From Schmidtea nova (Eukaryota): 64,000 nt of DNA. A model generated the notes under the pieces. The model was given only the letters and a program-made list of their open reading frames with translations, was not told the origin of the DNA and searched no databases. Numbering within the stretch: position 1 is the stretch's first letter; each line of letters starts with the position of its first letter. The stretch is taken from the NCBI GenBank assembly GCA_044892505.1, contig CM097882.1:157790001-157854000 (forward strand), written 5' to 3'. Shown piece by piece: positions 4,926-64,000 of this stretch. Both the position numbers and the translations under genes were made by a program.

Positions 4926-4983
4926 AATTATTAATACTGGTGTGTTGGTTAGATGGACAACTGAGATCATTTGGATTTTATGC

Positions 4984-8127: not shown

Positions 8128-8218
8128 GCAGGATGTAGCTCAGTGGTTGAGGCACTCGAATCAAATATTTTAAATAATCTTGTTATATCAGAGGCTCGGG
8201 TTCAAATCCCAAGTTGTA
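8128..8218 (+). pseudogene. tRNA-derived sequence (SINE head or tRNA pseudogene)
   Basis: A box TAGCTCAGTGG and B box GGTTCAAATCCC with ~20 extra AT-rich nt between them; acceptor stem does not pair well; partial second copy near 9225-9260. Confidence 0.5.
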
Positions 8219-8320
8219 ATAATTTTTTTTATTTTTTCGTTTTTCTGAAAATCTTTTTACAGAATCAGATTCATCATATTGAGTTTGATCTAGATTAAAT
8301 TTTTAATGAATTGTGACAAG

Positions 8321-41049: not shown

Positions 41050-41090
41050 CTGATTGGTCGGTGTGCTGATCTGATCAGTATAAATACTGA
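41050..41090 (+). promoter_or_regulatory. LTR promoter, copy C
   Basis: CTGATTGG followed by TCAGTA-TAAA-TACTGA (TATA inside an inverted repeat). Confidence 0.7.
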
Positions 41091-43069: not shown

Positions 43070-43383
43070 AATTTTTTGATTAAATTACTGAAGTTAAAGT
43101 CTTATTAGTTTGTACAAATATAGTTTTATTATTTTCTTTAATTAAATTTTTGTAAAGTAAAGTAGTTTAAAGAAAATTTATTATTAAATGTCGAACGGAA
43201 TTAATCAAGTATAATTTATGTTAGAAGGGTATTCATAAAATTTAAGAAACGATCAACATTAGGATTTAAAGTAGAATATATAATAATTATTCGAATTAAC
43301 TGTTGATATTGTAAGAAGGGGCAGGAATAATAAAATGAAAGATAATGAATTCAGATAAAGTAAAGTGAAAGTAAAGCGTAAGT

Positions 43384-43567
43384 CCTTCTATCGGCAGCGA
43401 CGAACCCGCGAACATAAATGGGGAGTAGTTCTAGAAATAGGGCTCCCCTGCCCATCATTGTTAAAACACCTTACACATTTTCAACTCGACTATCCAGGGA
43501 AATAGTCGAGGGTGCTTGTGTGTCACGTAAGCATTTTATGTTTGGTCGTGGATGGAGGCATCCCTAG
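43384..43567 (+). ncRNA. conserved pseudoknotted cis-RNA element, copy C
   Basis: CCTTCTATCGGCAG...CTGCC, GGGGAG/CTCCCC, CTCGACTAT/ATAGTCGAG hairpin with loop AGGGA complementary to downstream TCCCT. Confidence 0.7.
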
Positions 43568-43899
43568 AGCATGTTTTCTGTTTAATTTTAACCCATCCAT
43601 GACCACAACAGTATTCTAGGTTATTATATTTTGATAAATAAATTCTTAGTTTTATCCTCAAATTATTAATTTTATAATAAATTATAAACTTGGCAATCCA
43701 CTGTTATTAAAAAAAGCTAGCGGCAACTTTTCTCTAATCTTATTCAGCCTAACCTAGCCAAATCAAGCTCAAATCTACTTCTTACACTCATTTCTCATCT
43801 TATTTAAATTCGAAATCGTCATTCATCATTACTTGCTAAAGCTGGGAAATTAAAATCTTGTATAAATTTGTCTAATTCATTATCAGCGTAATTGCCTTA

Positions 43900-47902: not shown

Positions 47903-48116
47903 AGCTAAACCATTTTGTCGTAGCTCCTCAAAATATTTTTGCTTCCACAGAAGATTGACGAAAATAACTCTTTTGCCAGGTTCCATTGCCCTATTTTGAA
48001 CCTAGTTCTCTACAAAATTCATAAGTTCATCATATCTGCTGGGATTATGGGTGGGTTTTAAGTAATTCAGATAAATAGTTAATCATTAATTGAACGACTA
48101 CTGATGAGTACGTATA

Positions 48117-48296
48117 CTAGGGATTCCACGCCCATAACCATACATAACATGACTACTACACGCGTATGCCCTTGACTATTCCCTACTAGTCAAGTTGGTA
48201 CTGCATACGGTGGTGGAAAAATGATGGGCAGGTGAGCTTTGTTGCCAAAACTACTCCCCATTTATCTTCCCTCGGGTCCTTGCTGCCGATAGAAGG
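48117..48296 (-). ncRNA. conserved pseudoknotted cis-RNA element, copy D
   Basis: CGTATGC/GCATACG and CTTGACTA/TAGTCAAG stems; loop TAGGGA pairs with downstream TCCCTA. Confidence 0.7.
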
Positions 48297-48594
48297 TCTT
48301 ACGCATTTACATTCTAGGGATGTTCGCCCTACTGAATTTTGTACTACATATCCTTATGATCTATCATACGCTTTTCCCAATGACTTTCTTTAATTGATCT
48401 ACAATGTAATTAATCAGTCCCTGCGTAGAAACGGTCGGTTTGAGAAAATTTCGGGTGCGATTTTTTATTTCGATGATTTCATTGTTGTTATTTTATTTTA
48501 TTTAGTAACATCACCCGATGAGAGACAAAATTTACACAGAAAATACTTTTATTAAAATACTAAAATCAGGTTGTTATTTTACATAGATATTTTC

Positions 48595-49179
48595 CTAAGC
48601 GAATTCCAGACTGATCTCCTGAATCAACTCCGCTTCGGTTAAGGAGTTCAAGTGGTGGATTTGTTCGTCCAGGCGCTTTGCAAATTCTCGGCGACGACGA
48701 CGCTGTCGCGATCCCATTCGGTGTTTTCGAAGCTGTTGGTTTATGACCGGTGCTGACGCTATTGTTCTCGGGGGATCACTGAGAAAAATAGACAAGTCTT
48801 CCGTTGCGAGAGTGGGGGCCATGATGATTTCCTCTTCCGTCCCGCAAGCGACATCTTGGTGAGTGCATTGTATCCAGCGCTGAGCCGTGATCGGCCGGAT
48901 TAGCGCTCGTAATTCGGAGTCGATGTAACTTCTTGTTACTGCATTTAGGCAGTTTCGGAGTTCCCGCTGGACGGCATCTAGTTCCAATTTGGTTGCGGCC
49001 AGTGCTTCCTGCATCCGCTCAAGTTTTTTCGACTGGTCCTTCATTTGTTCGGGTGAGAACCACTTCGCTCTCAATTCATCATTGGCGACCGTGAGTCGCT
49101 TGATCTGTCGCTGCTGGTCCCTCAACTTCCTTTCTTGGATTTGTCCCATGATTTTCTTAGAATTTTCTGAAGTCGGCAT
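48595..49179 (-). CDS. LTR-borne ORF2 (intact, MPTSENS...)
   Basis: First ATG at 49179, 5 nt after acceptor ATATTCAG; WFSPEQMK, LRNCLNAVT, LIRPITAQRW, KHRMGSRQRRRRREF. Confidence 0.82.
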   Translation of the reverse strand: MPTSENSKKIMGQIQERKLRDQQRQIKRLTVANDELRAKWFSPEQMKDQSKKLERMQEALAATKLELDAVQRELRNCLNAVTRSYIDSELRALIRPITAQRWIQCTHQDVACGTEEEIIMAPTLATEDLSIFLSDPPRTIASAPVINQQLRKHRMGSRQRRRRREFAKRLDEQIHHLNSLTEAELIQEISLEFA

Positions 49180-49505
49180 GTTGTCTGAATATGATAACGA
49201 TAAATTCGCTGGAGGACCTATCACCAATGTTATTTTATTTAAACAACTATTTATTATTATTAAACGAGTTACATACTAATGTTTTTAATTATTGAGTTCT
49301 TTGCAAAATTATTTAACTACCTAATTATTGAAGGCTCAAAAAATTTATTGAACTAATTTGAGATTATTAAATGAAATTCCTAATGACTATAACAACTACA
49401 ATACTAAATATTAATAAATCTACATTACAACACTATTAACAAAATGAACATTTCAGATTTCTTTAAAACATTTATTTAATTTAGAACAGGTGGCCATTGA
49501 TGTAA

Positions 49506-49982
49506 CTAGTTATCTTCGGTCATTTTTCCTCGATACGAAAATATCGATCTGATTTGCAAATTTGTATGGATTCCTGTGCTATTGGACGAGGCCTGCTGAA
49601 AACGGGTTCTCTCCGCTTCTCGAAGGGGTCGTATGGCTGTATTGAACTTGAACCCCAATTCCTTGAAGGTAGAGGCTGGAATGAACCCCCAATAAATGAC
49701 ACATTTCGGGAATCCTCCCTTATCCAACATCAGAACGAACCAGGCGGCGTGCCATGATTCGAATTCCTCGTCTGGAATGATTGGCCAACTAGCGCATCCC
49801 CGGTACCATACGTGATGCCGTGGATGGTCCCATACCGTAAATGGACAGGCGATTTCGAGCTCTCGGCGCCATGCCCACATTTTTTGATGGATTTGCTGTA
49901 AAATCTCGAAAGGTGCCGGCTTTAATGGGCTAACTCGGGCTCGTTCTTGTCGTTTTTTGATAGTGTATCTATGCTTAGTCAT
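49506..49982 (-). CDS. LTR-borne ORF1 (158 aa)
   Basis: WYRGCASWP...WFVLMLDKGGFPKCVI resembles the copy A/B ORF1 core; acceptor AAATTCAG ~15 nt before ATG. Confidence 0.62.
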   Translation of the reverse strand: MTKHRYTIKKRQERARVSPLKPAPFEILQQIHQKMWAWRRELEIACPFTVWDHPRHHVWYRGCASWPIIPDEEFESWHAAWFVLMLDKGGFPKCVIYWGFIPASTFKELGFKFNTAIRPLREAERTRFQQASSNSTGIHTNLQIRSIFSYRGKMTEDN

Positions 49983-50876
49983 GATTCCAAAACGATGCTG
50001 AATTTTATAATAGTTACAATTTACATCAATAATTAATCATAGTAAATGTTATCTCTCATCGTGATACCCTTATTATTTGCCTTCCCCTTAGACCTTAGCT
50101 GAAATCAAGGAAAACTGTCGTTCGTTACGGTATGCATTACTCTCGTATCTACTTAGCTTTATCTGTTTACGATCAATATTATAGTTGAAAAATGGTGATT
50201 TGTCTGCTTGGATTTTTAAAATATTGATACCTCAACACGGAAGCTCTCTCCCGTCATGTATCCCTAGCTTATTCGAAAAACGCTCTTTTGTACCAAATGC
50301 GGTCGACAAAATTTTCTGAGGTTTATTAGACGTTTATCTAGCAACAATTCGTGCCTCCCCACGGTTAAAGAATTCTTTCATATCTTTAAGCTTTATCAAA
50401 AATTTATCGTCCCCTCCGTAGCCAAAACGATCAGAAAATAATTCCCCGGATTTGTTGGGTGTCCCATGTGCAAATCTCATCCATCACTAACAAAATTATG
50501 TTTTGTTATTTATTACTTTACCGTGTGTGGAGCCCTCGAGCACCACGCCACGGACGGACACCTTGGGAACCTAAAGCTCCCAACGGCGCAAGATTAATAT
50601 GATAGTTTAAATAGTTTAAATATAACATAAATCATGAGATAACTAATAAATTATAATATGATAATGACATACGAATACAACGATATCATAAACGTAAATA
50701 TACCAAAAATACCTCAATTGAATTCTGAAAATTTATTGATCAAAATCGGTCTAAACGGTGATCGTCGTCGGGGCAATGTGCAATCTAATGTGAATTTTTA
50801 GTTAAAGTCTAAATTTCAGTCTAACAAAGTCTACTGAAGTCTCACTCTAGTCAAAACGTCTCTTTTTATGAAAAAT

Positions 50877-50923
50877 CTGATCAGTATTTATACTGATCAG
50901 TCGTGTCTAGACCGACCAATCAG
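50877..50923 (-). promoter_or_regulatory. LTR promoter, copy D
   Basis: CTGATCAGTA-TTTA-TACTGATCAG palindrome containing TATAAATA on the minus strand, CCAATCAG box adjacent. Confidence 0.7.
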
Positions 50924-51491
50924 GTTCGGCCATTTTCAGGGTGGTTTTTAATTATTGTTCTTGATTCTAATTAATTTTTATTTTTTAGATTGTATTCTTC
51001 CTTGGAGGTCCGGGTTTCAAAAACAATTATTCAATAACAAGTACTTTTATTTTGTTTTAATTACCATTATTTGTATTTATTTTGTTTTTTAGATGTCTCC
51101 TGGGCCAGTTAATATCTCGAAATTCCTTTATTTTTATTTATAGCTTGTATTTAGTTTATCTATATTTTTACTATATTATTCCTTTCTTTTAATAAATAAA
51201 TATTCCCCTTTTTATCTTATTTTTCTCTTTTTTGTTTTAATTAATCCACTTTTATTTCACTGTTCCCTCTATTTGGCTGGCCCAACATCACTCGGGGACC
51301 CCTAAAATTGCGTCCCGCAATTAATTATACATTTACACCTATATCATCATACATAAAAATTAAGCAGATAAATGTCAATTTACATATACACAAAGAATCA
51401 CATAAGGTGATAGATTTTATACGTAAGCACAAAGTCATATTATTGTTAAATGTAAGTGGATCATACATAAAGTGAATGTAATATATCAGTT

Positions 51492-51713
51492 TTACACAAG
51501 CTCTTTGATTTCATGATTGGTATTGGATTGGATTGGGGTTCTTTCGCTGATTGTTCGTAGTTCGTAGTGGCTTTGGATTCGGTTTAGGTGTTTTCTCATT
51601 CGCTTTTGGGTTCTGCTGTCTTGTATTGTTGTTCGATTCAGGATGACTTGTTTTTGTTTTAGGATCTTCACTCGGTATGATGCTATGAGGATTGTGATCG
51701 CGATAATGGTCAC
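51492..51713 (-). CDS. possible small accessory ORF (hydrophobic N-terminus)
   Basis: Last ORF of the A-rich array; overlapping alternative frame 51511-51750; no clear acceptor. Confidence 0.35.
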   Translation of the reverse strand: MTIIAITILIASYRVKILKQKQVILNRTTIQDSRTQKRMRKHLNRIQSHYELRTISERTPIQSNTNHEIKELV

Positions 51714-51787
51714 GCTGAGTGCAAGGATTATTATAATTGCGATGATCCATTTTTCTTGATATTCTATTTCTGCTTGGGCTAAGCTTT

Positions 51788-52063
51788 TTATGGGTTCTCG
51801 ACCTTCTTTTGGGTTTTTCTGATTGTTTTCAATTTGATTCGATGTTCATATAGGACCTGTTGAAATTTTTCATCGTTTGGGTTGTCTGATGTTATCTGTT
51901 GAAGTTGGGTGATTTCTTGTGTTGCTTCGCTGATTAGTTTATCTAGTTCTTGATAGGTTTTCTCGGGTAGGGCTCGTAGCTCCTTCTCTGTGAGTTGAAG
52001 ATCTTCTCTTTGTAGGGTGATTGTTATTAGGTATATGAATATCGGTATTCCGAGCTTCTTCAT
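51788..52063 (-). CDS. small accessory ORF, hydrophobic N-terminus plus coiled coil (91 aa)
   Basis: Same codon style as neighbours, LGIPIFIYLITITL segment, tandem position in the array. Confidence 0.55.
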   Translation of the reverse strand: MKKLGIPIFIYLITITLQREDLQLTEKELRALPEKTYQELDKLISEATQEITQLQQITSDNPNDEKFQQVLYEHRIKLKTIRKTQKKVENP

Positions 52064-52145
52064 ACTGTTTTCTTTACAGATAGGTCAATACAATTTGACA
52101 CTACATTTCATACAATTATTTACAAAAATATATTTTCCGCTTTAT

Positions 52146-53207
52146 TTACACAATCGTCTCGTTTGGTTCGTAGAAACCTTCGTCCTGAGGCTCTACCTGA
52201 TTCGTGGGGAGTGGTATCCATACAACCCTGCTCCTCCACATTTCGACTTCATCTCGATACATGTGAGATATCTGGATTTCCTCGTCCAGCAAATATTCTA
52301 GGTAATTTGCTTGTTCTGTTAATGTTTCTATTTGCTTCTCTAATTCGATTACTTTTGTCTTTTGTTCGTCTTCCTTCATCATTTTTGTTACGGCTGCCGT
52401 TATACTTGCTTCTTTGGGTATTACTGATACTGTTACTCGTTTCTGTTTCAATTCTTCGTTTTCTTTCATCAAATTCGTTAAATTTTCCTCATAACTTTGT
52501 TTCTCTTCCTTTAACCTTTCTCTGGTTCTTTTTAGCTCTATTTTCTTCTGGGTAATCACTCCTTGATAACCATTTATATCTCTCTTCATCTCTTCTTCTT
52601 TCTGATTCCATATTCCGGTGAGCATAATTTTCAGTTGTTCTTGATTAGCAAGTTCTTCTCCCATTCTTTGAACTTGATAGGTTAGTCCTTTAATTTTCTT
52701 TGCTTGTTCCCGGATAAATTGCTGTCTCTTTGTATTCCATCTTTTATTCAACACTTCTTGGTGTATTTTCTGTTCTAACTCGTCTTTTAATTCGTCGATC
52801 TCTTTATATAATTTCCAGTCATCACTATAAGCTGTCCTTTCTATTATTTCTCTAGCTTTTTCGTAAGATTCTTTCGCTTCTTTCTTCCAGTATCTTGCTT
52901 GTTCTGTAATCGAATACATCTTGTGTTCAGCTTCCATCTGCTGTCTGTCTCTTTCCTCTCGTCGCTCTTTCATCATTCTCTGGTAATATTCCTTTTGTTG
53001 TTGTAGCACTTTGTATACTTCTTCTATTTTTTCTCGACTTCTTTGACTTGATCTTTCCGCTTCTTTTAATAATTCGGCTTGTCTCTCTATCTCCTCTTGT
53101 TTCCCATAATATGCATTGACCCATATTTCAATCTGTTCTCGATGATCGCTAATCGCTTCGGCTTGATGTATCGTAATTTCTTGTAAGCATACTTCGATAT
53201 TTCCCAT
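52146..53207 (-). CDS. accessory coiled-coil protein (353 aa)
   Basis: Long E/K/Q/R-rich helical ORF; T-tract acceptor TTTTTTTTTTGAAATTATAG 2 nt before ATG. Confidence 0.8.
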   Translation of the reverse strand: MGNIEVCLQEITIHQAEAISDHREQIEIWVNAYYGKQEEIERQAELLKEAERSSQRSREKIEEVYKVLQQQKEYYQRMMKERREERDRQQMEAEHKMYSITEQARYWKKEAKESYEKAREIIERTAYSDDWKLYKEIDELKDELEQKIHQEVLNKRWNTKRQQFIREQAKKIKGLTYQVQRMGEELANQEQLKIMLTGIWNQKEEEMKRDINGYQGVITQKKIELKRTRERLKEEKQSYEENLTNLMKENEELKQKRVTVSVIPKEASITAAVTKMMKEDEQKTKVIELEKQIETLTEQANYLEYLLDEEIQISHMYRDEVEMWRSRVVWIPLPTNQVEPQDEGFYEPNETIV

Positions 53208-53324
53208 TGCTATAATTTCAAAAAAAAAATTTTTTTAATCGGTTTATATATCAGTTATTTTTTGTTTATATAATAATTTTTGGGTATTTAACTGTACACA
53301 TTATTTACATGATCACTTCTCTTG

Positions 53325-54707
53325 TTACGTCAACCATCCTTTTCTATCCGCTTTCTCATTCCTTTCCATTTCTATGTATAGGGTGTCTGCATATAATCGT
53401 TCCCATAAGCTTTCTTTCGTTATAAACATCGGTTCTCCCGCTGCTAATCCACATTCTGTGGTTGGTTTCTCGCTCGTACTCGCATGTTTCTCTGTCTCAA
53501 AGAATTTTTCCACCGGTTTTGCTACACTTCTGATTCTTATAATGACTCCTACTTTCAAGGGCCATTCTACTAGGTCGTCGTATTCTCCTTTACATAGCGA
53601 GAAAAATATTGACACATGTGTTCCTCGTCCTCTTCCGTCTCCATTTGGGTATAGCTTCAATCTCATTTTAGCTCCGTTTCTCCATAAATAAAATGGTGGG
53701 CTTATTACTGCTGTTTTCGTCATATTTCTGGCCTCTGTTAATTTGTCTCTAAAATCTGTCACTTTCCACACATATGGTGCGATTGGTAACTTTTCCTCGG
53801 TATCCTGGGTGAGTTTGTTGTACTGGATTTTCATTCCTTTAGCCAGTTCTTCGATAGCTTTTATCTTTTCCTCCATCTTTTCTCGTGTTAGTTCGAATTG
53901 CTCTCTGGTTTCCAACAGTAGGTTTACCATTATCTTGTGTGACTCTATTTCTCTTTCTAATTTTTTGATTGTTTGTTCGGTTTCTTTTGTTGCTTCGTTT
54001 GTCATTTCCGCATGCTTTAGCAATGCTTCCTCCAGATGTTGTTTCATGGTTTTTTGCGTTCTTTTCTCCATACATCCCTGTTTGTTATAAGGACATTCCC
54101 TTGGTTTCTCCGTGCACACTTTCCAATGTTCTTGTAATTTTACTTCTACCGTTATCTCGCATTCGTTTGAACATATTCCTACATATTGTCTACATACTTT
54201 CTCCTCTTTTACATTCAGGTGTTCTTCTTCGATCTTTCTCCTCGTTTCTCGAGTTCCACAATATTCGCATAGACTTTCCTCTTCTTTACATTCATCTTTG
54301 TGCTGCTCTTTATTCTTTATAGTTATTTTTTGTTGGCATTTGTTACATTCAGTTCTCTTCTCTTCGCAGTTCTCCAGATGGTTCTCGAGATCGCGTATTT
54401 GTCCTTGCCATATACATGGTTGATTTATACATTCGGTTTTCGTGTTCATGATTTCTCTCTGAGTTTCTCTATCTGGTCCGGTTTCTTCGAATTTTATTTG
54501 TCCTTCTTTGCATTCTGGACATTCTGGTGGTCTTTTCATACTTAACTCGTGTATGCATTTGGTACATACTCTGCATCCGCATAGGGTTTGTCTTGGTTTC
54601 AATATTATGTTTTTACAATTTACACAAGTGAGTCTCTGACTCCATTTCCTGTTCTCGGCTCTCAAAATTTCGATTATCCGCTCTTCGGCTTTTCCTTCTG
54701 TATTCAT
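53325..54707 (-). CDS. TRAF: TRAF-family protein (RING, TRAF zinc fingers, coiled coil, MATH), intronless
   Basis: CVNC...CGCRVCTKC...CPEC RING; CxxxC/HxxxC zinc fingers; MATH motifs VWKVTDF, SPPFY, LYPNGDGRGRGTHVSIFF, EYDDLVEWP; acceptor CATTGTAG 1 nt before ATG. Confidence 0.92.
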   Translation of the reverse strand: MNTEGKAEERIIEILRAENRKWSQRLTCVNCKNIILKPRQTLCGCRVCTKCIHELSMKRPPECPECKEGQIKFEETGPDRETQREIMNTKTECINQPCIWQGQIRDLENHLENCEEKRTECNKCQQKITIKNKEQHKDECKEEESLCEYCGTRETRRKIEEEHLNVKEEKVCRQYVGICSNECEITVEVKLQEHWKVCTEKPRECPYNKQGCMEKRTQKTMKQHLEEALLKHAEMTNEATKETEQTIKKLEREIESHKIMVNLLLETREQFELTREKMEEKIKAIEELAKGMKIQYNKLTQDTEEKLPIAPYVWKVTDFRDKLTEARNMTKTAVISPPFYLWRNGAKMRLKLYPNGDGRGRGTHVSIFFSLCKGEYDDLVEWPLKVGVIIRIRSVAKPVEKFFETEKHASTSEKPTTECGLAAGEPMFITKESLWERLYADTLYIEMERNEKADRKGWLT

Positions 54708-54797
54708 TCTACAATGATATATACACTTGATTTGTTATCTATTTTTTGATTTTTCTTGTTTTTGTTTTACATATTTACAATTTTTCGCTTTATTTAT

Positions 54798-55154
54798 CTA
54801 CGGCTCGTTTGTTGAATCTGGTTCTGGGTCATTTTCTGATCTGTTTATTGCCCAATTTGTCCATCCATCCTCTGCTTCTTCTGTCTCTCCCATTGTTAAA
54901 CGGTCTATCTCTATTGCTTGTCTCTGATTTATGTCGCTCATCACTTGATTCTCTCTGGTGAGTTGCGTTATCAATCTCTGTTGCTCCTCGATTCTGTGGA
55001 GTTGTTCAAAACTATTATTATAACTTTCGGATAACAAATTCTGTTTCTCAATTAACTGATTTTGTAGTGAGTTGATTGTTCGTATTAACATGTCACACTG
55101 GGCTTTCCATCGCATAGCCATAGTAGTTTCTGCTATTTCTTCCTGTTCGTTCAT
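54798..55154 (-). CDS. small accessory coiled-coil protein (118 aa)
   Basis: Heptad-like Q/E/L pattern; acceptor TTAATGTATATAATTTAG 3 nt before ATG. Confidence 0.7.
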   Translation of the reverse strand: MNEQEEIAETTMAMRWKAQCDMLIRTINSLQNQLIEKQNLLSESYNNSFEQLHRIEEQQRLITQLTRENQVMSDINQRQAIEIDRLTMGETEEAEDGWTNWAINRSENDPEPDSTNEP

Positions 55155-55279
55155 TTTCTAAATTATATACATTAATCGTTTTCTCGATTTCTCTTTTTAT
55201 ATTTTTATAATATCGATACCCATACTATTACGGTAATGCATTGTTATTTACACTATTATTTACAGTCATATCCCGCCTC

Positions 55280-58200: not shown

Positions 58201-61200
58201 CATTCTTTGTTAATAAGAAAGTCACTGGCATTTCTCTTTTTATGATCATCATATCGTTTTCATTGTAAGTTCCTTCCGCATATGCGTGTACCTTTTCCAC
58301 AATTGCTCCGAGTATCTCCAGTGTATGTTTAGAATTTTCGAATTCTGGTAATAGTTCTTTTGCTTTGTCCTGTATCGCATCTAACCTTTCTTGATATGGT
58401 ACTTCTGCGCTGAAAAGTGGTGTAAATTTCCTTTTGCTTTCTCTTTCCTTTCGACATAGGAATTGTTTGCATTTTTCGGGGTGGTTTAATATGTCTATTA
58501 GTTTGTCATACTCTTCTTCCACCGTTTTGTATTTATCTTGAAAATTGGATATATCTTTGTAAGTTATCGTCTTGGTTAGCGATTTTGCACACCATTCCCT
58601 AATTTTCCTGAATAATGCTTCTTTTTCACTTTCGAATTTACACTCCTCTTTGTTTTTGGAAATTGTAATATTTCTTCTGTCCAATAATATTAACAGTGTT
58701 TTCTGATCACAAACTAATTTTAATAGGAATTGTAATAACGCGTTTTGTCCTTTACTGTATACTTCGTTTATATTTAATACCCATGTATCATTTTCGGATC
58801 TTTTCCATTTTATTAGCTTGCGTATTGTTTTGCAGTTACCGATTTTTATTGCCTCCTTGATTATATCACCTTTGATCAGTTCGTCTATTTCCCAAGTGGC
58901 CTTCTCGATTATTCGTTTGAGCATTATCTGATTTGAGCTCCATATTGCGTGATTCAAGACTGTTTTGTTTTCTCTATCGCGCTCCGTCCAGTTGAAATCG
59001 GCATTTATCAAAAGGTCTATTATTGCCTTATCCGATTTGTAGATGGCTGCTACCATTAATGGTGTTTCTTGTTCGCTATTCCCAAAACCAAGGTGTTGGT
59101 TGGTTTCCTTTGCGATTTTTAGAAGTTCTTTTACCCTCTCTACTTCTCCCCATTTTATGGCGTTATGTAATGCTGGTTGTCCTCCTATGTCTTCTAGTGA
59201 AAGTATTTCTGGAATTTTCTCCAGTAGTTCTGAAATGACTGGTTTTGTTGGTAGTCCCCTTGCGTAATCACTAATTATAGACTGTATATCTCTTAATATA
59301 TCGTCTCTGACATGCCATTTTCCCATTATTTCTCTGGCTTTTAGTACAATTTCCTTGTTTCTTTTTCCTTGTTGATTGTTTTCTGCTTCGGTACTTTCAT
59401 TGGTTGCTCTGAGCATATTCATTCTGGCTGTCTGGGATCTAGTTATTATTCGTTCTTCTGGCGTTGTGGTTATTGTCTTTGGTACTTCTTTACATCTGCA
59501 TGTATTAACGTATATTGGTCGTATCAATGGTCGATTAACAAGTTTTACCTTCACATTGTTTTCCTTTTTGTATATGACTTCGTAAGGGCCTTTTCCTGGT
59601 CTTTGTAGTTTTTTAACGGTTCCTGGTATTATTTCTGGGGTTTCTATCATTACCCAATCTCCCGGCTTAAGATCATTTGTTTTAACATTTTTCTTTTGAT
59701 CGTGTAGGTCCTTGTAACTTTCCTGGTAAAACTTTATGTTTAGCTCTGCTGTCTTCCATATCTCTTGCATTCGTTCTTTGAATTTGGTGACGTAATCATC
59801 TTCCTCCATATATTGAGACAAAGGTGGTTGATATTCAAGATCTATTGGCATATTGCATTCCCTTCCATACATTAATTGAAACGGACTCAATTTTGTTGCT
59901 GCGTGTATCGACATTCGGTATGCCATTAGACATAGCTTTATGTACTCATCCCAATCTGTTTGGTGTTTGCTTACATAATTGGATAACATTCGAATCAATG
60001 TGCCGTTAAATCTTTCCGTTTGTCCATTGGTTTGCGGATGATATGGTGACGTTCGTAATTTGGCTATCCGGAAGTAATTTGTTACTTCATCTAATATTTC
60101 GCTCATGAAATTTGTTCCTTGATCTGTTAGTATTTGTTTCGGGGTTCCGTATCGACAACATATTTCCTCTACTAAAATTCTTGCTACCGTCTTTGCTTTT
60201 TGATCCGGCATCGCAAATGCCTCAGGGAATTTCGTCAAATAATCCGTTATTACCAATATATATTGATTCACATTTAAACTTTCTGGCAATGGTCCTATTA
60301 CATCCATCGCAATGGTAGTCATTGGTTCCGCTGGTATTGGCATGGGTTTTAAGGGATTTTTCCATTTCTTCCCACTATCCTTTCTTGTGGCACAAGTTAA
60401 ACAGTTCTTTATCCATTCCTTTACGTCCTCGTCCATTGTTGGCCAATAATATTTTTGTCTCATACGATCTAATGTTTTCTTATCGGACATGTGTCCTCCC
60501 AACTTTCCGTCGTGGTATTGAGTTATTATCTCTTTTCGTCTATTACCTGGCAGACACATTAATCGTTTTTCTCCATCCTGTATTAATAACCATCCTTTTT
60601 CTATTGTGTATCGATGTTGGTATTTCCTCATGTGTTCTTTTAACTCCGCATTGTCTTTGAATACATCCATATTCCGTGAGCTTAGGAATTCTATGATGGG
60701 TCTTAGTTCTTTATCCTCTTGCTGATCTTTCTTTAACTCGCTGAAATCCAAATCTTCTGCTATCATTATGCATATTCTTTGCACTTCTGGGTCTGTTAAT
60801 TCTGGAAACGTTAATCTTGACATGCAATCTGCGTTGGCATTCGCTTTTCCTGATTTGAATTTTATATCTGGTGAATATTCTTGTAATTGCATCGCCCATC
60901 TCATCAACCTGCTGGATGTTTCCTTATGTTGTCCTAGCCATACCAGTGGTTGATGATCCGTGGTTATGCATATAATGTGTCCCCATAATAGATATTTAAA
61001 GTGTTTTATTGCTAATATTATTGCCAATGCTTCTCTTTCCGTTACTGAATAATTCTTCTCGTGTTTCTTGAATGTTCTGCTATAATATCCGATTACCCGC
61101 TCTTTTCCCTCGTCATCATATTGTCCTAACACTGCTCCTGCTGCATATCCACTTGCGTCGGTTGCGAGTAAAAATGGCTTTTTGAAGTCCGGGTGAACCA

Positions 61201-63997
61201 ATATTGGTGCAGTTATTAGCTTATCTCTCAATGTTTCAAAGGCTGTTTGTTGTTCGCTTCCCCATATGAACGATACGTCTTTCTTTACTAGCTCCTGGAT
61301 TGGTTTTGCAATTCCTGCGTAATCCTTTATGAATTTTCTATAGTAACCGCATAATCCGAGAAATTCTTGGATCTGCGTTATCGTCTTTGGTACTGGACAT
61401 TCTTTTACTTTATCAATGTTTCTGGGATCTGGTTCCTTTCCTTTTGCGGACACAATATGTCCTAAGAATGTCACTTTCTCCTTTGCCCAATCGCATTTCG
61501 ATGGTTTGAGCTTGAGTTTCCATTGTCTCAGTCTAACAAATACATCTCTGATATCTTGGATGTGTTGTTCAAATGTGCTTGAGTAGATCAGTAGGTCATC
61601 AATGTAAACCATGCATTGTTTTATGCCGTGGGTAACGAAATTCATACATCTTTGAAATGATGCTGGCGCATTGGTTAGTCCAAATGGCATTTTCCTAAAC
61701 TGGTACAAGTCTCTTCCGATAGTGAAAGCAGTTTTCTCTTTGTCTTCCTCCTTCATTTTAATTTGCCAGTATCCGCTTTTCAAATCCAATGATGTAAAAT
61801 ATGCCGCTCCTTGTAATGTCAATAACATCTCGTTGATGTCTGGTAATGGGTATGTATCCCTTTTTGTAACTGCATTTAATCTCCGATAATCAATACAAAA
61901 TCGTTGTGTTCCGTCTTTCTTTTTCACCATTACAACTGGGAATTGCCACGGTGAGCAGCTTGGTTCAATTACTTCTGCGTCTAGCATTTTCTGTACTTCT
62001 GCTTCGGCTACTGATTTTTGCGCTTCAGCTAACTTGTATGGTCTTAACGCAATAGGCGTTTCGTCTGTTAGTGGAATCGTATGTAGTGTGACGTCGCATG
62101 TCCCTAGATCTAAATCGGATGCTGCGAATATGTCTTTATATTCTATCAGTAATTTTTCTAGCTGTTTCTTTTGATCCTCATTCAATAGTTGGCTATCAAT
62201 GTTCCAAGTGGGTTCTTCCTCTTTTACTCCTTCTTTTATTGGTATTTCGATATCTATCATTGGAGTTAGTTTACCTAATCTTTCATTTTCATAAATTATT
62301 TTATCCTCTTCATCGAAATTTACTACATTTATTGGGATTTCTCCGTTGTCATTCGCACTCACTAATCCCCTTGCCATTGGCAACGACTTTCTCTTTTCAA
62401 ATCTTTTACTGGGTTCAAAGATCATGTCACCTTCTATTGTAGGATCTATTTTTACGAAACATATTTTCTCTCTCCGTGCTGGTACGATTATTTGTTTCGA
62501 ACTTGTTACTTTTGCTTCTATTGCGCATATCTGTCCTGTCCTATCCTTTAATCTCATTGTTCCGAGGTCAATAACTATTTCTTTAAATAATGCTGGCATC
62601 AGATCCGTGCCTATAATGCATGGTACGCTTAGTGCTGGTATTACTGCTACGTACGTTTCGATTTCCGTGTTTTGATGTTTTATCTTTACCCACCATCTTC
62701 CGGCAACTTCTACTACTTCTTTACTGCATGCTATTACGTGAACGTTGGTTCTCTCAATATCCCGTCTTTGTTCTTGTGGTATCCATTTTATATCTATTGC
62801 TGAGATATTTGCTCCTGTATCAATCATCGCTTCAATTTCCCTTCCGTTAATTTCGATTGTTGTAGTTAATACTGGACCGGTGTTTGATGACATTACTGCA
62901 ATTGTATGTGAGTCTCCTTGCGGATCTACGCTTCTGCACCGTCTCGTTCTATAGTCTTCTGGTATCATAGGATATATGTTTGTCATCGGCATCATTTGCA
63001 TTGTATTTTGTCTCATCCCTGGTGTTGGTTCTTGGTACATGGTTGGTGGGGGTGCGTAACACTTCCACATTTCCGCTGGATTCTTTTCGACATACTGTGG
63101 TACTTGATTTTTAAATACTTGACCTCCTTCGTTATCATCATCATCGTCGTCACTGGAATCGTCTTGGGTTCTGTACCCTTTCATTCTTTCCCATAGTCCT
63201 TTTCTCTCTTTCTTTAGTTGTTGTCTTGCTTGTTCGTTATTCATTATCTTTTTAAATTTTCGTCCCACCTCTTCATCGGTTCCTTTCATTTTTGCCAGTA
63301 TTTTTAGGAGTCTCTTTATTCGGTGAATATCTTTTGAATGACCGTGTAATACCATTGTTTTAGCCAAAAATGGTAAGAATCCTACCACCAATTTCCAATT
63401 TACTTTCTTTTCTCTTTTATAGATGTCAAAACAGGCTAACATTTGCGTTATTATTACCCGTATTATTTGTATAATTAGTATAACACCAAGTATTCCTGCC
63501 ATCATTTGTCCAAATATTAAAAATCTTCCCCACATCGCTTTCATCATGTTTTCCGTTGCCTTCTTAAAGTGGGCTGGTGACAATAATAATTCATAATTTG
63601 GTCCACCTTGGTAATTTGTTCCTCCTGTTATTGTTACAATGCTGGATAACACCGCTTCCCTTCTTGCTGGAAATAGTATGTTTTGTCTCGCTGCCTCTAA
63701 GTCTTTTGCGCTATAGAATCCCATATTGCTTACATCTACGTCTTTAAATTTTCGTCCTTTTGATAGTTGCATCAATTCAAATTCCCTTGGTGCTGGTACC
63801 TCTGTTCTTGACGGAAACATAACCCAATTCCCGTCTGGTTTTTGGTATAATGGTCCATATGCGTTGCTGCAATTGAAAGGGTTTGGTTCGAAGCTTACTG
63901 GATTTATGATTCTTGTCACTGGTTGCACATATCTTACTTTCCCTTTGTATTCGATTTCTAGTTCGTTAGTACACTGACCTGGTTGTAATTTGGTCAT
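55280..63997 (-). CDS. pol: giant polyprotein (>2905 aa, 5'-truncated by window): glycoprotein-TM, protease, RT, RNase H, integrase, ankyrin repeats, signal peptide, 4 FN3-like repeats, TM
   Basis: DTG 62813-62821; YIDD 61595-61606; DAS 61151-61159; HHCC ~60390-60514; DVIGP/TDQG/GQTERFN core; GPY ~59585; ankyrin LH/PL motifs 57930-59190; no stops; frame open to the window edge. Confidence 0.95.
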   Translation of the reverse strand: MTKLQPGQCTNELEIEYKGKVRYVQPVTRIINPVSFEPNPFNCSNAYGPLYQKPDGNWVMFPSRTEVPAPREFELMQLSKGRKFKDVDVSNMGFYSAKDLEAARQNILFPARREAVLSSIVTITGGTNYQGGPNYELLLSPAHFKKATENMMKAMWGRFLIFGQMMAGILGVILIIQIIRVIITQMLACFDIYKREKKVNWKLVVGFLPFLAKTMVLHGHSKDIHRIKRLLKILAKMKGTDEEVGRKFKKIMNNEQARQQLKKERKGLWERMKGYRTQDDSSDDDDDDNEGGQVFKNQVPQYVEKNPAEMWKCYAPPPTMYQEPTPGMRQNTMQMMPMTNIYPMIPEDYRTRRCRSVDPQGDSHTIAVMSSNTGPVLTTTIEINGREIEAMIDTGANISAIDIKWIPQEQRRDIERTNVHVIACSKEVVEVAGRWWVKIKHQNTEIETYVAVIPALSVPCIIGTDLMPALFKEIVIDLGTMRLKDRTGQICAIEAKVTSSKQIIVPARREKICFVKIDPTIEGDMIFEPSKRFEKRKSLPMARGLVSANDNGEIPINVVNFDEEDKIIYENERLGKLTPMIDIEIPIKEGVKEEEPTWNIDSQLLNEDQKKQLEKLLIEYKDIFAASDLDLGTCDVTLHTIPLTDETPIALRPYKLAEAQKSVAEAEVQKMLDAEVIEPSCSPWQFPVVMVKKKDGTQRFCIDYRRLNAVTKRDTYPLPDINEMLLTLQGAAYFTSLDLKSGYWQIKMKEEDKEKTAFTIGRDLYQFRKMPFGLTNAPASFQRCMNFVTHGIKQCMVYIDDLLIYSSTFEQHIQDIRDVFVRLRQWKLKLKPSKCDWAKEKVTFLGHIVSAKGKEPDPRNIDKVKECPVPKTITQIQEFLGLCGYYRKFIKDYAGIAKPIQELVKKDVSFIWGSEQQTAFETLRDKLITAPILVHPDFKKPFLLATDASGYAAGAVLGQYDDEGKERVIGYYSRTFKKHEKNYSVTEREALAIILAIKHFKYLLWGHIICITTDHQPLVWLGQHKETSSRLMRWAMQLQEYSPDIKFKSGKANANADCMSRLTFPELTDPEVQRICIMIAEDLDFSELKKDQQEDKELRPIIEFLSSRNMDVFKDNAELKEHMRKYQHRYTIEKGWLLIQDGEKRLMCLPGNRRKEIITQYHDGKLGGHMSDKKTLDRMRQKYYWPTMDEDVKEWIKNCLTCATRKDSGKKWKNPLKPMPIPAEPMTTIAMDVIGPLPESLNVNQYILVITDYLTKFPEAFAMPDQKAKTVARILVEEICCRYGTPKQILTDQGTNFMSEILDEVTNYFRIAKLRTSPYHPQTNGQTERFNGTLIRMLSNYVSKHQTDWDEYIKLCLMAYRMSIHAATKLSPFQLMYGRECNMPIDLEYQPPLSQYMEEDDYVTKFKERMQEIWKTAELNIKFYQESYKDLHDQKKNVKTNDLKPGDWVMIETPEIIPGTVKKLQRPGKGPYEVIYKKENNVKVKLVNRPLIRPIYVNTCRCKEVPKTITTTPEERIITRSQTARMNMLRATNESTEAENNQQGKRNKEIVLKAREIMGKWHVRDDILRDIQSIISDYARGLPTKPVISELLEKIPEILSLEDIGGQPALHNAIKWGEVERVKELLKIAKETNQHLGFGNSEQETPLMVAAIYKSDKAIIDLLINADFNWTERDRENKTVLNHAIWSSNQIMLKRIIEKATWEIDELIKGDIIKEAIKIGNCKTIRKLIKWKRSENDTWVLNINEVYSKGQNALLQFLLKLVCDQKTLLILLDRRNITISKNKEECKFESEKEALFRKIREWCAKSLTKTITYKDISNFQDKYKTVEEEYDKLIDILNHPEKCKQFLCRKERESKRKFTPLFSAEVPYQERLDAIQDKAKELLPEFENSKHTLEILGAIVEKVHAYAEGTYNENDMMIIKREMPVTFLLTKNGVLPIHRALRAGKDRRVVEIARLMQDCGSDMNMKDKKGDTLMIFAARANTKTRVLQELYEAGAGLMGRTNKDSSILDVALLAHNWEVINFIKTITNQEEIEYLTRTVKKASVHSMMHNAELTEAILNWMNPNTNEPAFRINECMEQGQNLYIKCALIINKWPKIIDIFMRRKDLRFTNNPKETERTDKWKELMKTYLNNWIKAKKEILDCKLTDKEIPKQAVTQEYEASILTTITYEKMIEAINVEDDIFNDQRGGDNTGNDDDSTRENPEDHELSDEEDSEEKGRDTEKNDKKNEFGKQRNNNYKNKNEAKRTGYKQTINPFFKPELLLLTVIMTLISPTQGMICEERATIQIGNAKGIERVCWSKKDKISGQNSPMDCRISEYEQGIIEIDDLELDTWYKICTIRKQKNPRSHNTIACANYLTPKVTITIQQSSKGDYVVGKCGRTETQGTKNKKPQTIDRRTTPTIQITIDRPEARVTTNETERVTYQTELLCLALILTMLKRLEEGIDIDTMAVTEMNDTQNTNPKCWARSNEEIGVSEIKTSRKRKTNKVTKISEVKADRTYELCLLEKERHKKGTTICKTFQPGETIKFIRRGRRNKRTKRRTTIMLELTGIEPDVKGVCWKKQERKTNQNTPPQCRTNRGTTTIQIEGLESNQTYEICLIRKSDKITVNELECRLYKTPTRTRAGKTTRKSRRQRNKGKARYTTTFKPNGQQKNQDIQIKTEKNTTATLILWRIDNKTLEICWVIVQKQRERQPRDCGNAKGKEEISIRNLKFNSEYEICAIEKTDILGNQQERCETYYTPVNSTSKGKVRKLEFKELSQTTKQMDAEQVVIDPYARWTPEEVIKEVKRKQQEREQLLNKLKGQYGPMINQSEITKMDVNKQVRELIGLGILAATIPVITVLLIIWIYDVFNKKPITHWPDIKIMNYSIELPEEVHKEFQRRTKGKEFWRQIEDEERYEGKTVMVI

Positions 63998-64000
63998 TGT

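What the first reader, a model, noticed from the sequence alone, without database searches (positions are those of the whole stretch)
48037..64000. Giant virus-like retroelement with complex-retrovirus gene organisation
At least 16 kb of one element is present, and it continues upstream. It combines a >2900-aa polyprotein with two predicted membrane proteins flanking Pol, 4-5 downstream accessory genes including a host-type signalling gene, and a gene-bearing 3.25-kb LTR with structured RNAs. All main ORFs are uninterrupted, so the copy looks young. Giant Metaviridae (Burro) are known from Schmidtea mediterranea. I cannot confirm whether this domain set, the splice design and the LTR cassette have been described.
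Basis: partly seen in the sequence, partly recalled or inferred. Interest (0 to 1): 0.92.

Follow-up and report, generated by a model that had tools for sequence, protein, structure and literature searches.

The report
Burro-type giant flatworm retroelement, 3' half

Summary
On the minus strand, 48037-64000 carries one coherent element. A 2907-codon ORF is open to the window edge. It encodes the C-terminal part and anchor of a viral fusion glycoprotein, then PR-RT-RNaseH-IN, two ankyrin blocks, and a signal-like segment with four Cys-rich beta repeats and a second anchor. Five tightly spaced accessory cistrons follow, one a complete TRAF (RING, TRAF zinc fingers, MATH). Last comes a 3251-nt LTR (48037-51287) with a CCAAT/TATA core, a donor-like site, GC-rich hairpins and two ORFs.

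Pol is Ty3/gypsy (Metaviridae). Env in frame upstream of PR, ankyrin after IN and a MATH/TRAF gene match the published Burro/GYPSM1 elements and the GAG-ENV-POL errantiviruses of flatworms. Novelty was overstated.

The LTR call rests on three further LTR-like units in the window with the same termini and layout; the 5' LTR lies outside the window. Splicing, activity and age are untested.

Possibly undescribed: the conserved two-gene LTR cassette with position-conserved hairpins, and a TGTAAATA motif plus YAG-ATG punctuation at each accessory cistron.

No Burro sequence was available, so membership rests on architecture. It differs from published Burro1: no dUTPase, and TRAF is a separate downstream gene. 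Verdict: new member of a known kind, moderate interest.

The parts
55280..64000 (-). Polyprotein ORF, 2907 codons, open at the window edge (5' part lies outside the window)
   Evidence: no stop in this frame against 321 and 155 stops in the other two frames of the strand; coding strand 43% A
63416..63976 (-). C-terminal part of an env-like viral fusion glycoprotein with its membrane anchor (aa 8-194; anchor aa 157-193)
   Evidence: PF24664 Monjiviricetes_fusion 9.4e-28, profile 395-579 of 653; hydropathy; 37-44% identity to the env part of metagenomic relatives
62591..62863 (-). Retroviral-type aspartic protease (aa 379-469, DTGA)
61451..61927 (-). Reverse transcriptase (aa 691-849, YIDD)
60875..61264 (-). 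RNase H (aa 912-1041, TDAS)
59573..60550 (-). Integrase: H2C2 zinc finger, DDE core and GPY/F module (aa 1150-1475)
58709..59242 (-). Ankyrin repeat block 1 (aa 1586-1763)
   Evidence: weakly shared with relative P0015
57890..58249 (-). Ankyrin repeat block 2 (aa 1917-2036)
55283..57220 (-). C-terminal membrane-glycoprotein-like module: signal-like segment, four ~80-aa Cys-rich all-beta repeats (FN3-like, weak), coiled coil, anchor and short tail (aa 2260-2905)
   Evidence: 7 N-glycosylation sequons, 17 Cys, 2 furin-type sites; low-confidence model with four all-beta modules; only E~1 hits, all FN3 domains
54798..55154 (-). Accessory ORF, 118 aa, coiled-coil-like, no family match
53325..54707 (-). 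TRAF-like gene, 460 aa: RING, TRAF zinc fingers, coiled coil and MATH/TRAF-C
   Evidence: Nearest database proteins are only 23-31% identical
52146..53207 (-). Accessory ORF, 353 aa, long coiled coil, no family or solved-structure match
51495..52063 (-). Small type-I membrane-protein-like gene (signal-like N-terminus, later anchor plus basic tail); broken or recoded: one frame change
48037..51287 (-). 3' LTR, 3251 nt, TG...CA termini (TGTTGGG...CCCAGCA)
50877..50923 (-). Conserved promoter-like core in the LTR: inverted CCAAT box (CTGATTGGTCGGT) and a TATAAATA inside a palindrome
   Evidence: identical core in unit B, variant in unit C
50706..50715 (-). Splice-donor-like site (GAG|GTATTT) about 150 nt after the TATA box
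   Evidence: AAG|GTATGA in unit B and AAG|GTATGG in unit C at the same relative place; not tested on RNA
50520..50590 (-). Pair of GC-rich hairpins
   Evidence: z -3.8. Hairpin clusters with unrelated sequences sit at the same relative place in units B (z -6.3) and C (z -4.7)
49506..49982 (-). LTR gene 1, 158 aa, no known family
   Evidence: weak homologues at the same relative place in units C and D. Structure model unusable
48595..49179 (-). LTR gene 2, 194 aa from the ATG: N-terminal coiled coil, WFSPEQMK motif and arginine-rich patch
   Evidence: homologues in units B, C and D (36, 30 and 29% identity). None among 5.8 billion proteins
48117..48314 (-). Conserved ~200-nt block near the LTR 3' end (U5-like)
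   Evidence: 74% identity to unit B, motifs shared with C and D. Folds no better than shuffles (z -0.9)

Best explanation
This is the 3' ~16 kb of a giant Ty3/gypsy (Metaviridae) endogenous, virus-like LTR retroelement of the GAG-ENV-POL type, of the Burro kind known from dugesiid planarians.

Shown in the sequence:
- One huge ORF carries, in order: the end of a class-III-type viral fusion glycoprotein with its anchor; an acidic linker; PR, RT, RNase H and IN with all catalytic motifs intact; two ankyrin blocks; and a second membrane module (signal-like segment, four Cys-rich beta repeats, anchor).
- Five short accessory cistrons follow, including a complete TRAF.
- A 3.25-kb LTR closes the element. 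It contains a promoter-like core, a donor-like site, hairpins, two conserved ORFs and an AATAAA about 500 nt before its end.

Inferred mechanism:
- The element is transcribed from the LTR promoter.
- The polyprotein inserts in the ER membrane with both glycoprotein modules lumenal and PR-RT-RH-IN-ankyrin cytosolic, and is cut by PR and by furin-type proteases.
- The enzymes copy the RNA and integrate the DNA through the TG...CA ends.
- The accessory cistrons are expressed from spliced RNAs, either cis-spliced from the LTR donor or SL trans-spliced. Each ATG is preceded by YAG, and each stop is followed by TGTAAATA(A).
- The TRAF, ankyrin and coiled-coil products interfere with host ubiquitin, TNF-receptor and apoptosis signalling.
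- The LTR works as a self-contained two-gene transcription unit, so its two genes would lie in a very long R region.
For: Pol family:
- PR, RT, RNase H and IN domains in that order.
- Ty3 Gag-Pol is the best solved relative, 1.8e-119.
- Motifs DTGA, YIDD, TDAS, HHCC, D-D-E and GPY are present.

Env in frame before PR:
- PF24664 at aa 8-194 plus an anchor.
- The same arrangement, with a full-length env domain, occurs in relatives P0032, P0033, L004 and L005. Their env is 37-44% and their Pol 41-48% identical, and L005 has a CCHC gag upstream.
- The closest relative is L001, with Pol 49% identical and ankyrin after IN.

Literature:
- Burro/GYPSM1 have Gag, MATH_TRAF, BCL2, env in frame, PR, RT, RH, IN, ankyrin and accessory ORFs (PMC6431247).
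- Flatworm GAG-ENV-POL errantiviruses carry gB-type env (PMC13524379).

Unity of the element:
- The coding strand is 43-45% A across both the polyprotein and the accessory region, against 32% in the flank.
- Six of the 13 TGTAAATA matches in the whole window lie in the 426 nt of intercistronic spacers.
- YAG lies 1-5 nt before four accessory ATGs, and the same is seen in relatives.

LTR:
- Its first 17 nt are identical to those of unit C.
- All four units share the end motif and terminate in CA.
- Unit C carries TATTAA on both flanks.
- In L005 a purine run abuts TGTTGGGG directly after the last ORF.
Against: - Only one LTR is visible. Gag, the primer binding site and the 5' LTR lie outside the window.
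- No clear polypurine tract abuts the LTR start.
- The LTR ORFs are GC-richer and lack the A bias of the internal region, which fits a separately evolving unit.
- No Burro1-4 or GYPSM1 sequence could be obtained, so there is no direct identity or phylogeny. There is also no dUTPase between PR and RT, unlike published Burro1.
- The source organism was not identified by any tool.
- All expression steps are inferred: promoter use, splicing, membrane topology and proteolytic processing.
Confidence: 0.8

Rival explanations
1. The 3.25-kb unit (48037-51287) is not the element's LTR. It is an independent mobile two-gene cassette, or the LTR of another element, that landed just downstream of the accessory genes.
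For: - The three other units in the window (B, C, D) are not attached to a recognisable Burro-like internal region.
- Its base composition differs from the internal region.
- There is no obvious polypurine tract before it.
- The 5' LTR is not in view.
Against: - Its TG...CA ends carry short inverted similarity.
- The start motif TGTTGGG also follows a purine run right after the last ORF of the relative L005.
- Solo LTRs are the usual fate of LTR elements, and unit C has matching flanks.
- The unit starts only 208 nt after the last internal ORF.
- The published Burro sizes (25-kb interior, more than 30 kb in total) imply LTRs of about this length (PMC6431247).
Confidence: 0.1
2. Chance juxtaposition: the accessory ORFs (51288-55279), including TRAF, are host genes or remains of another element lying next to a gypsy pol.
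For: - The TRAF has a complete host-type architecture.
- None of the accessory ORFs has a homologue in the related loci L001-L005.
Against: - They lie on the same strand with 82-128-nt spacers.
- They show the same extreme A-richness as pol, unlike the flank.
- The same TGTAAATA and YAG-ATG punctuation begins right after the polyprotein stop.
- MATH_TRAF is a published Burro component, either inside ORF1 or as an accessory ORF (PMC6431247).
- Relatives also carry accessory ORFs directly after pol.
Confidence: 0.04
3. The copy is an inert fossil or a domesticated locus rather than a recently active provirus-like element. The intact ORFs would then reflect host selection or chance survival.
For: - One small gene carries a frame change.
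- Age cannot be measured without the second LTR.
- The locus sits in repeat-rich DNA.
Against: About 4200 codons stay open across seven ORFs, with every catalytic motif intact. That is hard to keep without recent activity or selection. BURRO1 is reported as abundant and expressed in S. mediterranea (PMC8532177).
Confidence: 0.2

Closest known systems
Burro1-4 / GYPSM1 giant gypsy-like LTR retroelements of Schmidtea mediterranea and Dugesia (Girardia) tigrina (Jurka 2007; Grohme et al. 2018; Arkhipova and Yushenova 2019, PMC6431247)
   Same: - Giant size and a huge polyprotein.
- An env-like mononegavirus-type fusion glycoprotein in frame just upstream of PR.
- PR-RT-RH-IN order with ankyrin repeats after IN.
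- A MATH/TRAF module, accessory ORFs and kilobase-sized LTRs.
- An AT-rich host genome.
   Different: - No dUTPase between PR and RT.
- TRAF is a separate downstream gene with its own RING and zinc fingers. In Burro1 it is a MATH domain inside ORF1, and in D. tigrina an upstream accessory ORF.
- The review I could read does not mention the second membrane module at the polyprotein C-terminus or the two LTR genes.
- No sequence comparison was possible.
GAG-ENV-POL errantiviruses with HSV/gB-type (class III) env in Platyhelminthes, Nematoda and Bryozoa (eLife 2026, PMC13524379)
   Same: Ty3/gypsy pol with the envelope gene placed between gag and pol, in a flatworm-type host.
   Different: Those elements are described with the basic three genes. 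Here the env-pol frame is continuous and is followed by about 1400 further residues, five accessory cistrons and a gene-bearing LTR.
Unnamed metagenomic relatives L001-L005 (ENA ERZ27235085 and ERZ25039515; NCBI DNYW01000170.1, binned as Flavobacteriaceae)
   Same: - Env 37-44% and Pol 41-49% identical.
- Env before PR; ankyrin after IN in L001.
- Accessory ORFs after pol, each with YAG just before the ATG.
   Different: - Their accessory genes differ (RNase_T exonuclease; no TRAF).
- They have several protease copies.
- None has a homologue of the two LTR genes.
Insect errantiviruses (gypsy, ZAM) and chuvirus-glycoprotein-bearing BEL/Pao elements of mosquitoes (PMC7642597)
   Same: LTR retroelements that captured a viral fusion glycoprotein; in the mosquito case it is a Jingchuvirales-type one.
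   Different: There env lies downstream of pol as a separate spliced ORF (gypsy, F-type env), or pol belongs to the Belpaoviridae. Neither has a giant polyprotein or host-signalling genes.
Complex retroviruses (spumaviruses, deltaretroviruses, lentiviruses; MMTV with sag in its LTR). This entry rests on my own knowledge, not on a tool result.
   Same: It works alike on paper: several accessory genes 3' of pol, a donor in the LTR leader, acceptors before each accessory ORF, a coding LTR, an arginine-rich small protein and leader hairpins.
   Different: The family is different (Metaviridae pol, with no Orthoretrovirinae signature). None of the accessory proteins is homologous to a retroviral one. 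Splicing and regulation are untested.

Membership tests
Metaviridae (Ty3/gypsy LTR retroelements) | Pol domain order PR-RT-RNaseH-IN with RT closest to Ty3/gypsy | tested here: met
   the domains lie in this order, and Ty3 Gag-Pol is the best solved relative (1.8e-119 over aa 650-1481).
Metaviridae (Ty3/gypsy LTR retroelements) | Intact catalytic motifs and an integrase GPY/F module | tested here: met
   DTGA, YIDD, TDAS, HHCC, D-D-E and GPY are present.
Metaviridae (Ty3/gypsy LTR retroelements) | Two long terminal repeats with TG...CA ends, a primer binding site and a polypurine tract | tested here: inconclusive
   One LTR with TG...CA ends is seen, and its termini are shared with three other units. 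The 5' LTR and primer binding site lie outside the window. No clear polypurine tract precedes the LTR.
Metaviridae (Ty3/gypsy LTR retroelements) | Gag with a capsid domain and CCHC knuckles | not testable with these tools
   Gag would lie upstream of the window. A relative, L005, has CCHC upstream of env.
Burro-type giant elements / flatworm GAG-ENV-POL errantiviruses | Env-like fusion glycoprotein located upstream of PR, in frame with pol | tested here: met
   PF24664 at aa 8-194 plus an anchor, in the same open frame as PR at aa 379. Only the C-terminal third of env is inside the window.
Burro-type giant elements / flatworm GAG-ENV-POL errantiviruses | Ankyrin repeats downstream of IN in the polyprotein | tested here: met
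   two blocks, at aa 1586-1763 and aa 1917-2036.
Burro-type giant elements / flatworm GAG-ENV-POL errantiviruses | MATH/TRAF-C module carried by the element | tested here: met
   Here it is a separate 460-aa downstream gene with RING and TRAF zinc fingers.
Burro-type giant elements / flatworm GAG-ENV-POL errantiviruses | dUTPase-like domain between PR and RT (reported for Burro1) | tested here: not met
   the 221 aa between PR and RT give no dUTPase hit even at E up to 1. This argues against identity with Burro1, not against the kind.
Burro-type giant elements / flatworm GAG-ENV-POL errantiviruses | BCL2-like, Ubi2/SUMO-like, BIR and Smc motifs and Gag in ORF1 | not testable with these tools
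   They are expected upstream of env, outside the window. None is found in the part seen.
Burro-type giant elements / flatworm GAG-ENV-POL errantiviruses | Total length above about 30 kb with kilobase LTRs | tested here: inconclusive
   15,964 nt are in view, and the ORF still runs at the window edge. The LTR is 3251 nt.
Burro-type giant elements / flatworm GAG-ENV-POL errantiviruses | Sequence similarity or RT-tree placement with Burro1-4/GYPSM1 or the published flatworm errantiviruses | not testable with these tools
   No Burro sequence is held by any tool. Grohme et al. 2018 and the primer tables are not held. Planarian proteins seem absent from the protein collections: the best Pol hit is 49% identical and comes from a metagenome.
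Retroviridae (complex retroviruses) | Retroviral-type pol and gag, env downstream of pol, and homologous regulatory proteins | tested here: not met
   Pol is closest to Ty3, with foamy and gamma retroviral RTs far weaker. Env lies upstream of pol. The accessory ORFs have no retroviral homologues.

The most novel reading that the evidence does not exclude
The LTR of this lineage has grown into an autonomous Pol II unit that encodes two lineage-specific proteins. One of them carries a conserved arginine-rich patch. The unit also keeps a position-conserved cluster of leader hairpins. Together with the per-cistron acceptor and TGTAAATA punctuation, this would be an independently evolved, complex-retrovirus-like regulatory layer in an invertebrate Metaviridae element: a small RNA-binding regulator acting on leader hairpins, plus differential splicing or trans-splicing of accessory mRNAs. 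Solo LTRs would then be scattered as expressed two-gene cassettes. Against this reading, the element's own copy of the arginine-rich protein lacks a canonical export signal, and no RNA data were available.
Probability: 0.1. Interest if true: 0.75.

Novelty: new member of a known kind. Interest (0 to 1): 0.35.

Why it matters
Burro-type elements make up a large share of planarian genomes. They are among the largest retroelements known, and they carry an envelope gene together with host-like signalling and apoptosis genes.

A clean, apparently intact 3' half gives a precise parts list for the least described portion: the post-integrase modules, the accessory cistrons and the LTR. If the two LTR genes, the leader hairpins and the cistron punctuation hold up across copies and in RNA data, they would show how a gypsy-type element built retrovirus-like gene regulation on its own. 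They would also flag the many solo LTRs as possible small gene cassettes in the host genome.

If these features are already in the Burro annotations, the finding is an ordinary copy of a known family.

Tried and rejected
Searches that found nothing:
- Exact-sequence look-ups of eight element ORFs and two paralogues found none in the collections.
- A homologue search with the post-IN part (aa 1350-2905) gave no hit.
- A profile of the LTR gene 2 family gave no hit among 5.8 billion proteins, nor in the related loci.
- Rfam and a tRNA scan found nothing, so the 'structured RNAs' belong to no curated family.
- Pfam on the PR-RT linker, the env tail and the C-terminal module gave no dUTPase, BCL2, BIR or fn3 hit.

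Analyses that were uninformative:
- The TRAF search returned only distant TRAFs at 23-31% identity, so no donor lineage could be named.
- The conserved 200-nt block near the LTR end folds no better than shuffles (z -0.9). I therefore do not call it a structured RNA.
- AlphaFold2 on the C-terminal ectodomain gave pLDDT 42, and on LTR gene 1 with a 3-row alignment pLDDT 38. Both are too poor for fold searches, which I did not run.
- A profile of the four repeats against the PDB gave only E~1 hits, all FN3 domains. This is suggestive, not evidence.
- The bacterial promoter and terminator scan is irrelevant here.
- Using L005 to confirm LTR ends worked only in part. The purine run plus TGTTGGGG fits, but the second copy in that contig does not share the ends.
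- The AATAAA just before the LTR donor is absent from unit B, so I do not read it as the R/U5 border.

Ideas weakened:
- A Rev-like reading of LTR gene 2 is weak. The basic patch is conserved in three of four copies, but the element's own copy has no canonical export-signal pattern.

Could not be obtained:
- Burro reference sequences or primers. Grohme et al. 2018 and Table S1 of PMC8532177 are not held.

- The interval that holds the one frame change of the small membrane-protein gene can be inferred from them.
- While working, I looked at the sequence context of a stop in the degenerate LTR unit D.
- No break positions or undoing changes are given in this report.

Full report
**What is there**

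The window is AT-rich, about 30% GC. From 48037 to the right edge, all long ORFs lie on the minus strand. The largest, 55280-64000, is 2907 codons and is still open at the window edge. The other two frames of that strand carry 321 and 155 stops over the same span, so the ORF is not a chance feature.

The coding strand is 43% A in this ORF and 45% A in the 4 kb that follow. It is 35% A in the terminal 3.25 kb and 32% A in the flank beyond 48037.

**The polyprotein**

Pfam places the following domains, and the solved-structure search agrees:

| Residues | Feature |
|---|---|
| 8-194 | Monjiviricetes_fusion, a viral fusion glycoprotein (9.4e-28; profile positions 395-579 of 653, i.e. only its C-terminal part) |
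| 379-469 | retroviral aspartic protease |
| 691-849 | reverse transcriptase |
| 912-1041 | RNase H |
| 1150-1207 | integrase zinc finger |
| 1224-1321 | integrase core |
| 1586-1763 and 1917-2036 | ankyrin repeats |

- The best solved relative is yeast Ty3 Gag-Pol (1.8e-119 over aa 650-1481). Foamy and gamma retroviral enzymes score far lower.
- The motifs DTGA, YIDD, TDAS, HHCC, the D-D-E residues and GPY are all present.
- Hydropathy gives an anchor at aa 157-193 at the end of the env-like part, a signal-like segment at aa 2260-2278 and a second anchor at aa 2822-2851.
- Between the last two lie four ~80-aa repeats with conserved C-W, C and Y-x-[IL]-C positions, seven N-glycosylation sequons and two furin-type sites.
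- A single-sequence AlphaFold2 model of this part is poor (pLDDT 42), although it draws four all-beta modules. A profile of the repeats finds only E~1 matches in the PDB, all of them fibronectin type III domains. I call the repeats FN3-like with low confidence.
- There is no dUTPase between PR and RT.

**Accessory cistrons**

After the polyprotein stop come, on the same strand:
- ORFs of 118 aa (54798-55154), 460 aa (53325-54707) and 353 aa (52146-53207);
- a small membrane-protein-like gene (51495-52063) whose signal-bearing and anchor-bearing parts lie in two frames. I count this as one frame change.

The 460-aa product is a complete TRAF. Residues 22-151 match the RING and zinc fingers of TRAF6/5/2, and residues 311-446 match the MATH/TRAF-C domains of TRAF5/3/2 (8.6e-23) (Pfam). 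The nearest proteins among 5.8 billion are only 23-31% identical. The 118-aa and 353-aa products look like coiled coils and match nothing.

**Punctuation of the cistrons (seen in passing, possibly new)**

- Each of the four spacers (85-128 nt) carries TGTAAATA(A) 0-25 nt after the stop. Six of the 13 matches in the whole 64-kb window, both strands, lie in these 426 nt.
- Each accessory ATG is preceded within 1-5 nt by YAG. For LTR gene 2 the distance is 5 nt, and for LTR gene 1 it is 15 nt.
- Relatives show YAG-ATG as well. In two places they also show TGTAAATA soon after a stop.
- This reads as one 3'-end or Pumilio-type motif (UGUANAUA, from my own knowledge) plus one 3' splice acceptor per cistron. 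It fits either cis-splicing from a donor in the LTR leader or spliced-leader trans-splicing of a polycistron. Neither is tested.

**The LTR**

It starts TGTTGGG and ends CCCAGCA. The 5' LTR is outside the window, so I looked for independent support. tblastn and blastn within the window found three more units of the same design:

| Unit | Position and strand |
|---|---|
| B | about 40.8-43.61 kb, plus |
| C | 4938-8022, minus |
| D | from 11623 to about 14.1 kb, minus, degenerate |

- Unit C begins with the same 17 nt, TGTTGGGCCAGMCAAAT.
- All four units end in a similar AACC...CA motif.
- Unit C has TATTAA on both flanks, one base off the CA end, as expected for a solo LTR.
- In the metagenomic relative L005, a purine run (GGAGAGGAGAGA) abuts TGTTGGGG right after the last ORF. 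The rest of that LTR could not be delimited cleanly.
- Against the LTR reading, no convincing polypurine tract precedes 51287.

On balance I accept the LTR.

**Layout inside the LTR**

The layout is shared by units A and C, and partly by B and D. In order:
- an AT-rich stretch of about 370 nt;
- a conserved core with CTGATTGGTCGGT and a TATAAATA inside a palindrome;
- a donor-like site about 150 nt later: GAG|GTATTT in A, AAG|GTATGA in B, AAG|GTATGG in C;
- a cluster of GC-rich hairpins that fold much better than shuffles in A, B and C (z -3.8, -6.3 and -4.7) although their sequences are unrelated;
- gene 1 (158 aa in A, 214 aa in C, remnants in D; weak similarity);
- gene 2 (194 aa in A; 36, 30 and 29% identical to the B, C and D copies; open in A, B and C);
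- an AATAAA soon after gene 2 in A, C and D;
- a ~200-nt block conserved at 74% between A and B, which does not fold better than chance.

Gene 2 has an N-terminal coiled coil, a WFSPEQMK motif and an arginine-rich patch that is conserved in three of four copies. The element's own copy has no canonical export-signal pattern. Neither gene family has any relative in the protein collections or in the related loci. The model of gene 1 was unusable. No Rfam family matches anywhere in the window.

**Relatives elsewhere**

A full HMMER scan with aa 1150-2349 returned thousands of gypsy integrases. The informative hits were the following:
- P0015/L001 has Pol 49% identical, with ankyrin after IN.
- P0032/L002, P0033/L003, L004 and L005 carry a full Monjiviricetes_fusion domain upstream of PR. 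Their env is 37-44% and their Pol 41-48% identical.
- L005 also has a CCHC gag in front.
- Their accessory genes differ (RNase_T exonuclease).

All of these come from metagenome assemblies. One is mis-binned in a Flavobacteriaceae MAG. Planarian proteins appear to be absent from the collections, so no close copy and no host name could be obtained.

**Comparison with the literature**

- Arkhipova and Yushenova (PMC6431247) summarise Burro/GYPSM1 of Schmidtea mediterranea. [quoted passage not shown] A 4873-aa ORF1 carries Gag, MATH_TRAF, Ubi2, BCL2, an env-like region 'in frame between gag and pol' with hits to mononegavirus fusion glycoproteins, PR, dUTPase, RT, RH, IN and ankyrin repeats.
- The same review notes accessory ORFs that can alternatively exist as subdomains. 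In Dugesia tigrina, MATH_TRAF is a separate upstream ORF.
- An eLife 2026 study (PMC13524379) reports GAG-ENV-POL errantiviruses with gB-type class III env in Platyhelminthes.
- BURRO1 is abundant and expressed (PMC8532177).

The present element fits this kind on every feature that can be seen. It differs from published Burro1 in lacking the dUTPase and in having TRAF as a full, separate, downstream gene. I therefore file it as a new member of a known kind, either another Burro family or one from a related species. I could not test sequence identity with any Burro entry.

**Mechanism**

Shown:
- the gene content, its order and its intactness;
- the shared termini and layout of the LTR units;
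- the motif enrichments.

Inferred:
- Transcription starts from the LTR core promoter.
- The polyprotein takes a membrane-threaded topology, with both glycoprotein modules lumenal and the enzymes and ankyrin blocks cytosolic.
- It is cleaved by PR and by furin-type proteases.
- The accessory cistrons are expressed from spliced or trans-spliced RNAs.
- TRAF, ankyrin and coiled-coil products interfere with host signalling.
- If the AATAAA after gene 2 is the poly(A) signal, R would be about 2.3 kb long and would contain both LTR genes.

**Rivals**

- The unit is an independent cassette rather than the LTR: 0.1.
- The accessory genes are juxtaposed by chance: 0.04.
- The copy is inert or domesticated rather than recently active: 0.2. 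This rival is compatible with the main identification.

- I did not bridge the frame change.
- The slips are declared under 'tried and rejected'.
- Nothing in the window or the fetched loci looked human.

Noticed in passing
window 52064-55282 (minus strand), spacers between accessory ORFs: TGTAAATA(A) follows each stop within 0-25 nt. Six of the 13 matches in the whole window lie in these 426 nt. YAG lies 1-5 nt before each accessory ATG. Relatives L001, L003 and L005 also show YAG-ATG, and L001 and L004 show TGTAAATA soon after a stop.
   Followed up: partly
window 4938-8022 (minus): LTR-like unit C, 3085 nt, has the same start motif, promoter core, donor-like site, hairpins, two open ORFs (6121-6765 and 5331-5888) and end motif as the element's LTR. 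It carries TATTAA on both flanks and looks like a solo LTR of a related family.
   Followed up: yes
window about 40760-43610 (plus): LTR-like unit B lies in the opposite orientation. It has an identical promoter core, very stable hairpins (z -6.3), an open homologue of LTR gene 2 (42479-43069) and the same end motif. No gene 1 homologue was recognisable, and the 5' boundary is uncertain.
   Followed up: partly
window 11623 to about 14150 (minus): LTR-like unit D is degenerate. Its homologues of both LTR genes are interrupted (at least one interruption each), and its 5' boundary was not determined.
   Followed up: partly
window 14812-15914 and 46528-47628: Two direct copies of another repeat, 78-88% identical and 31.7 kb apart. 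One lies 400 nt beyond the element's LTR end. It is not part of the element, and its family is unknown.
   Followed up: no
window 31136-32525 (plus): Remnant of a different retroelement (DUF7047 and an integrase core fragment). It has no similarity to the Burro-like polyprotein. A DUF7047-bearing element also lies next to the relative in metagenomic contig L005, which hints at related hosts.
   Followed up: no
window 19843-25300 and 37661-37794: Dense nested inverted and direct repeats of about 100-480 nt, 94-100% identical, in very AT-rich DNA interspersed with four N runs. I left the N runs as they are.
   Followed up: no
window about 8130-8225 (plus): A tRNA-like stretch (acceptor and T-arm-like sequence) lies next to unit C. 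ARAGORN calls no tRNA there. It may be a tRNA-derived SINE.
   Followed up: no
L002 (NCBI DNYW01000170.1, protein HBK71150.1): A 2627-aa env-PR-RT-RH-IN polyprotein of this eukaryotic retroelement clade is deposited inside a Flavobacteriaceae metagenome-assembled genome. This is most likely a binning contaminant.
   Followed up: no
L003, L004, L005 and P0015/L001: The relatives carry two to four aspartic-protease-like domains per element (one even after IN in P0015) and RNase_T-type exonuclease accessory genes. The window's element has neither.
   Followed up: no
window 48595-49982 against 51288-64000 (minus): The two LTR genes are about 47-50% GC with about 30% A. All internal genes are about 36-38% GC with 43-45% A. 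The reason for this contrast within one element is unexplained.
   Followed up: partly
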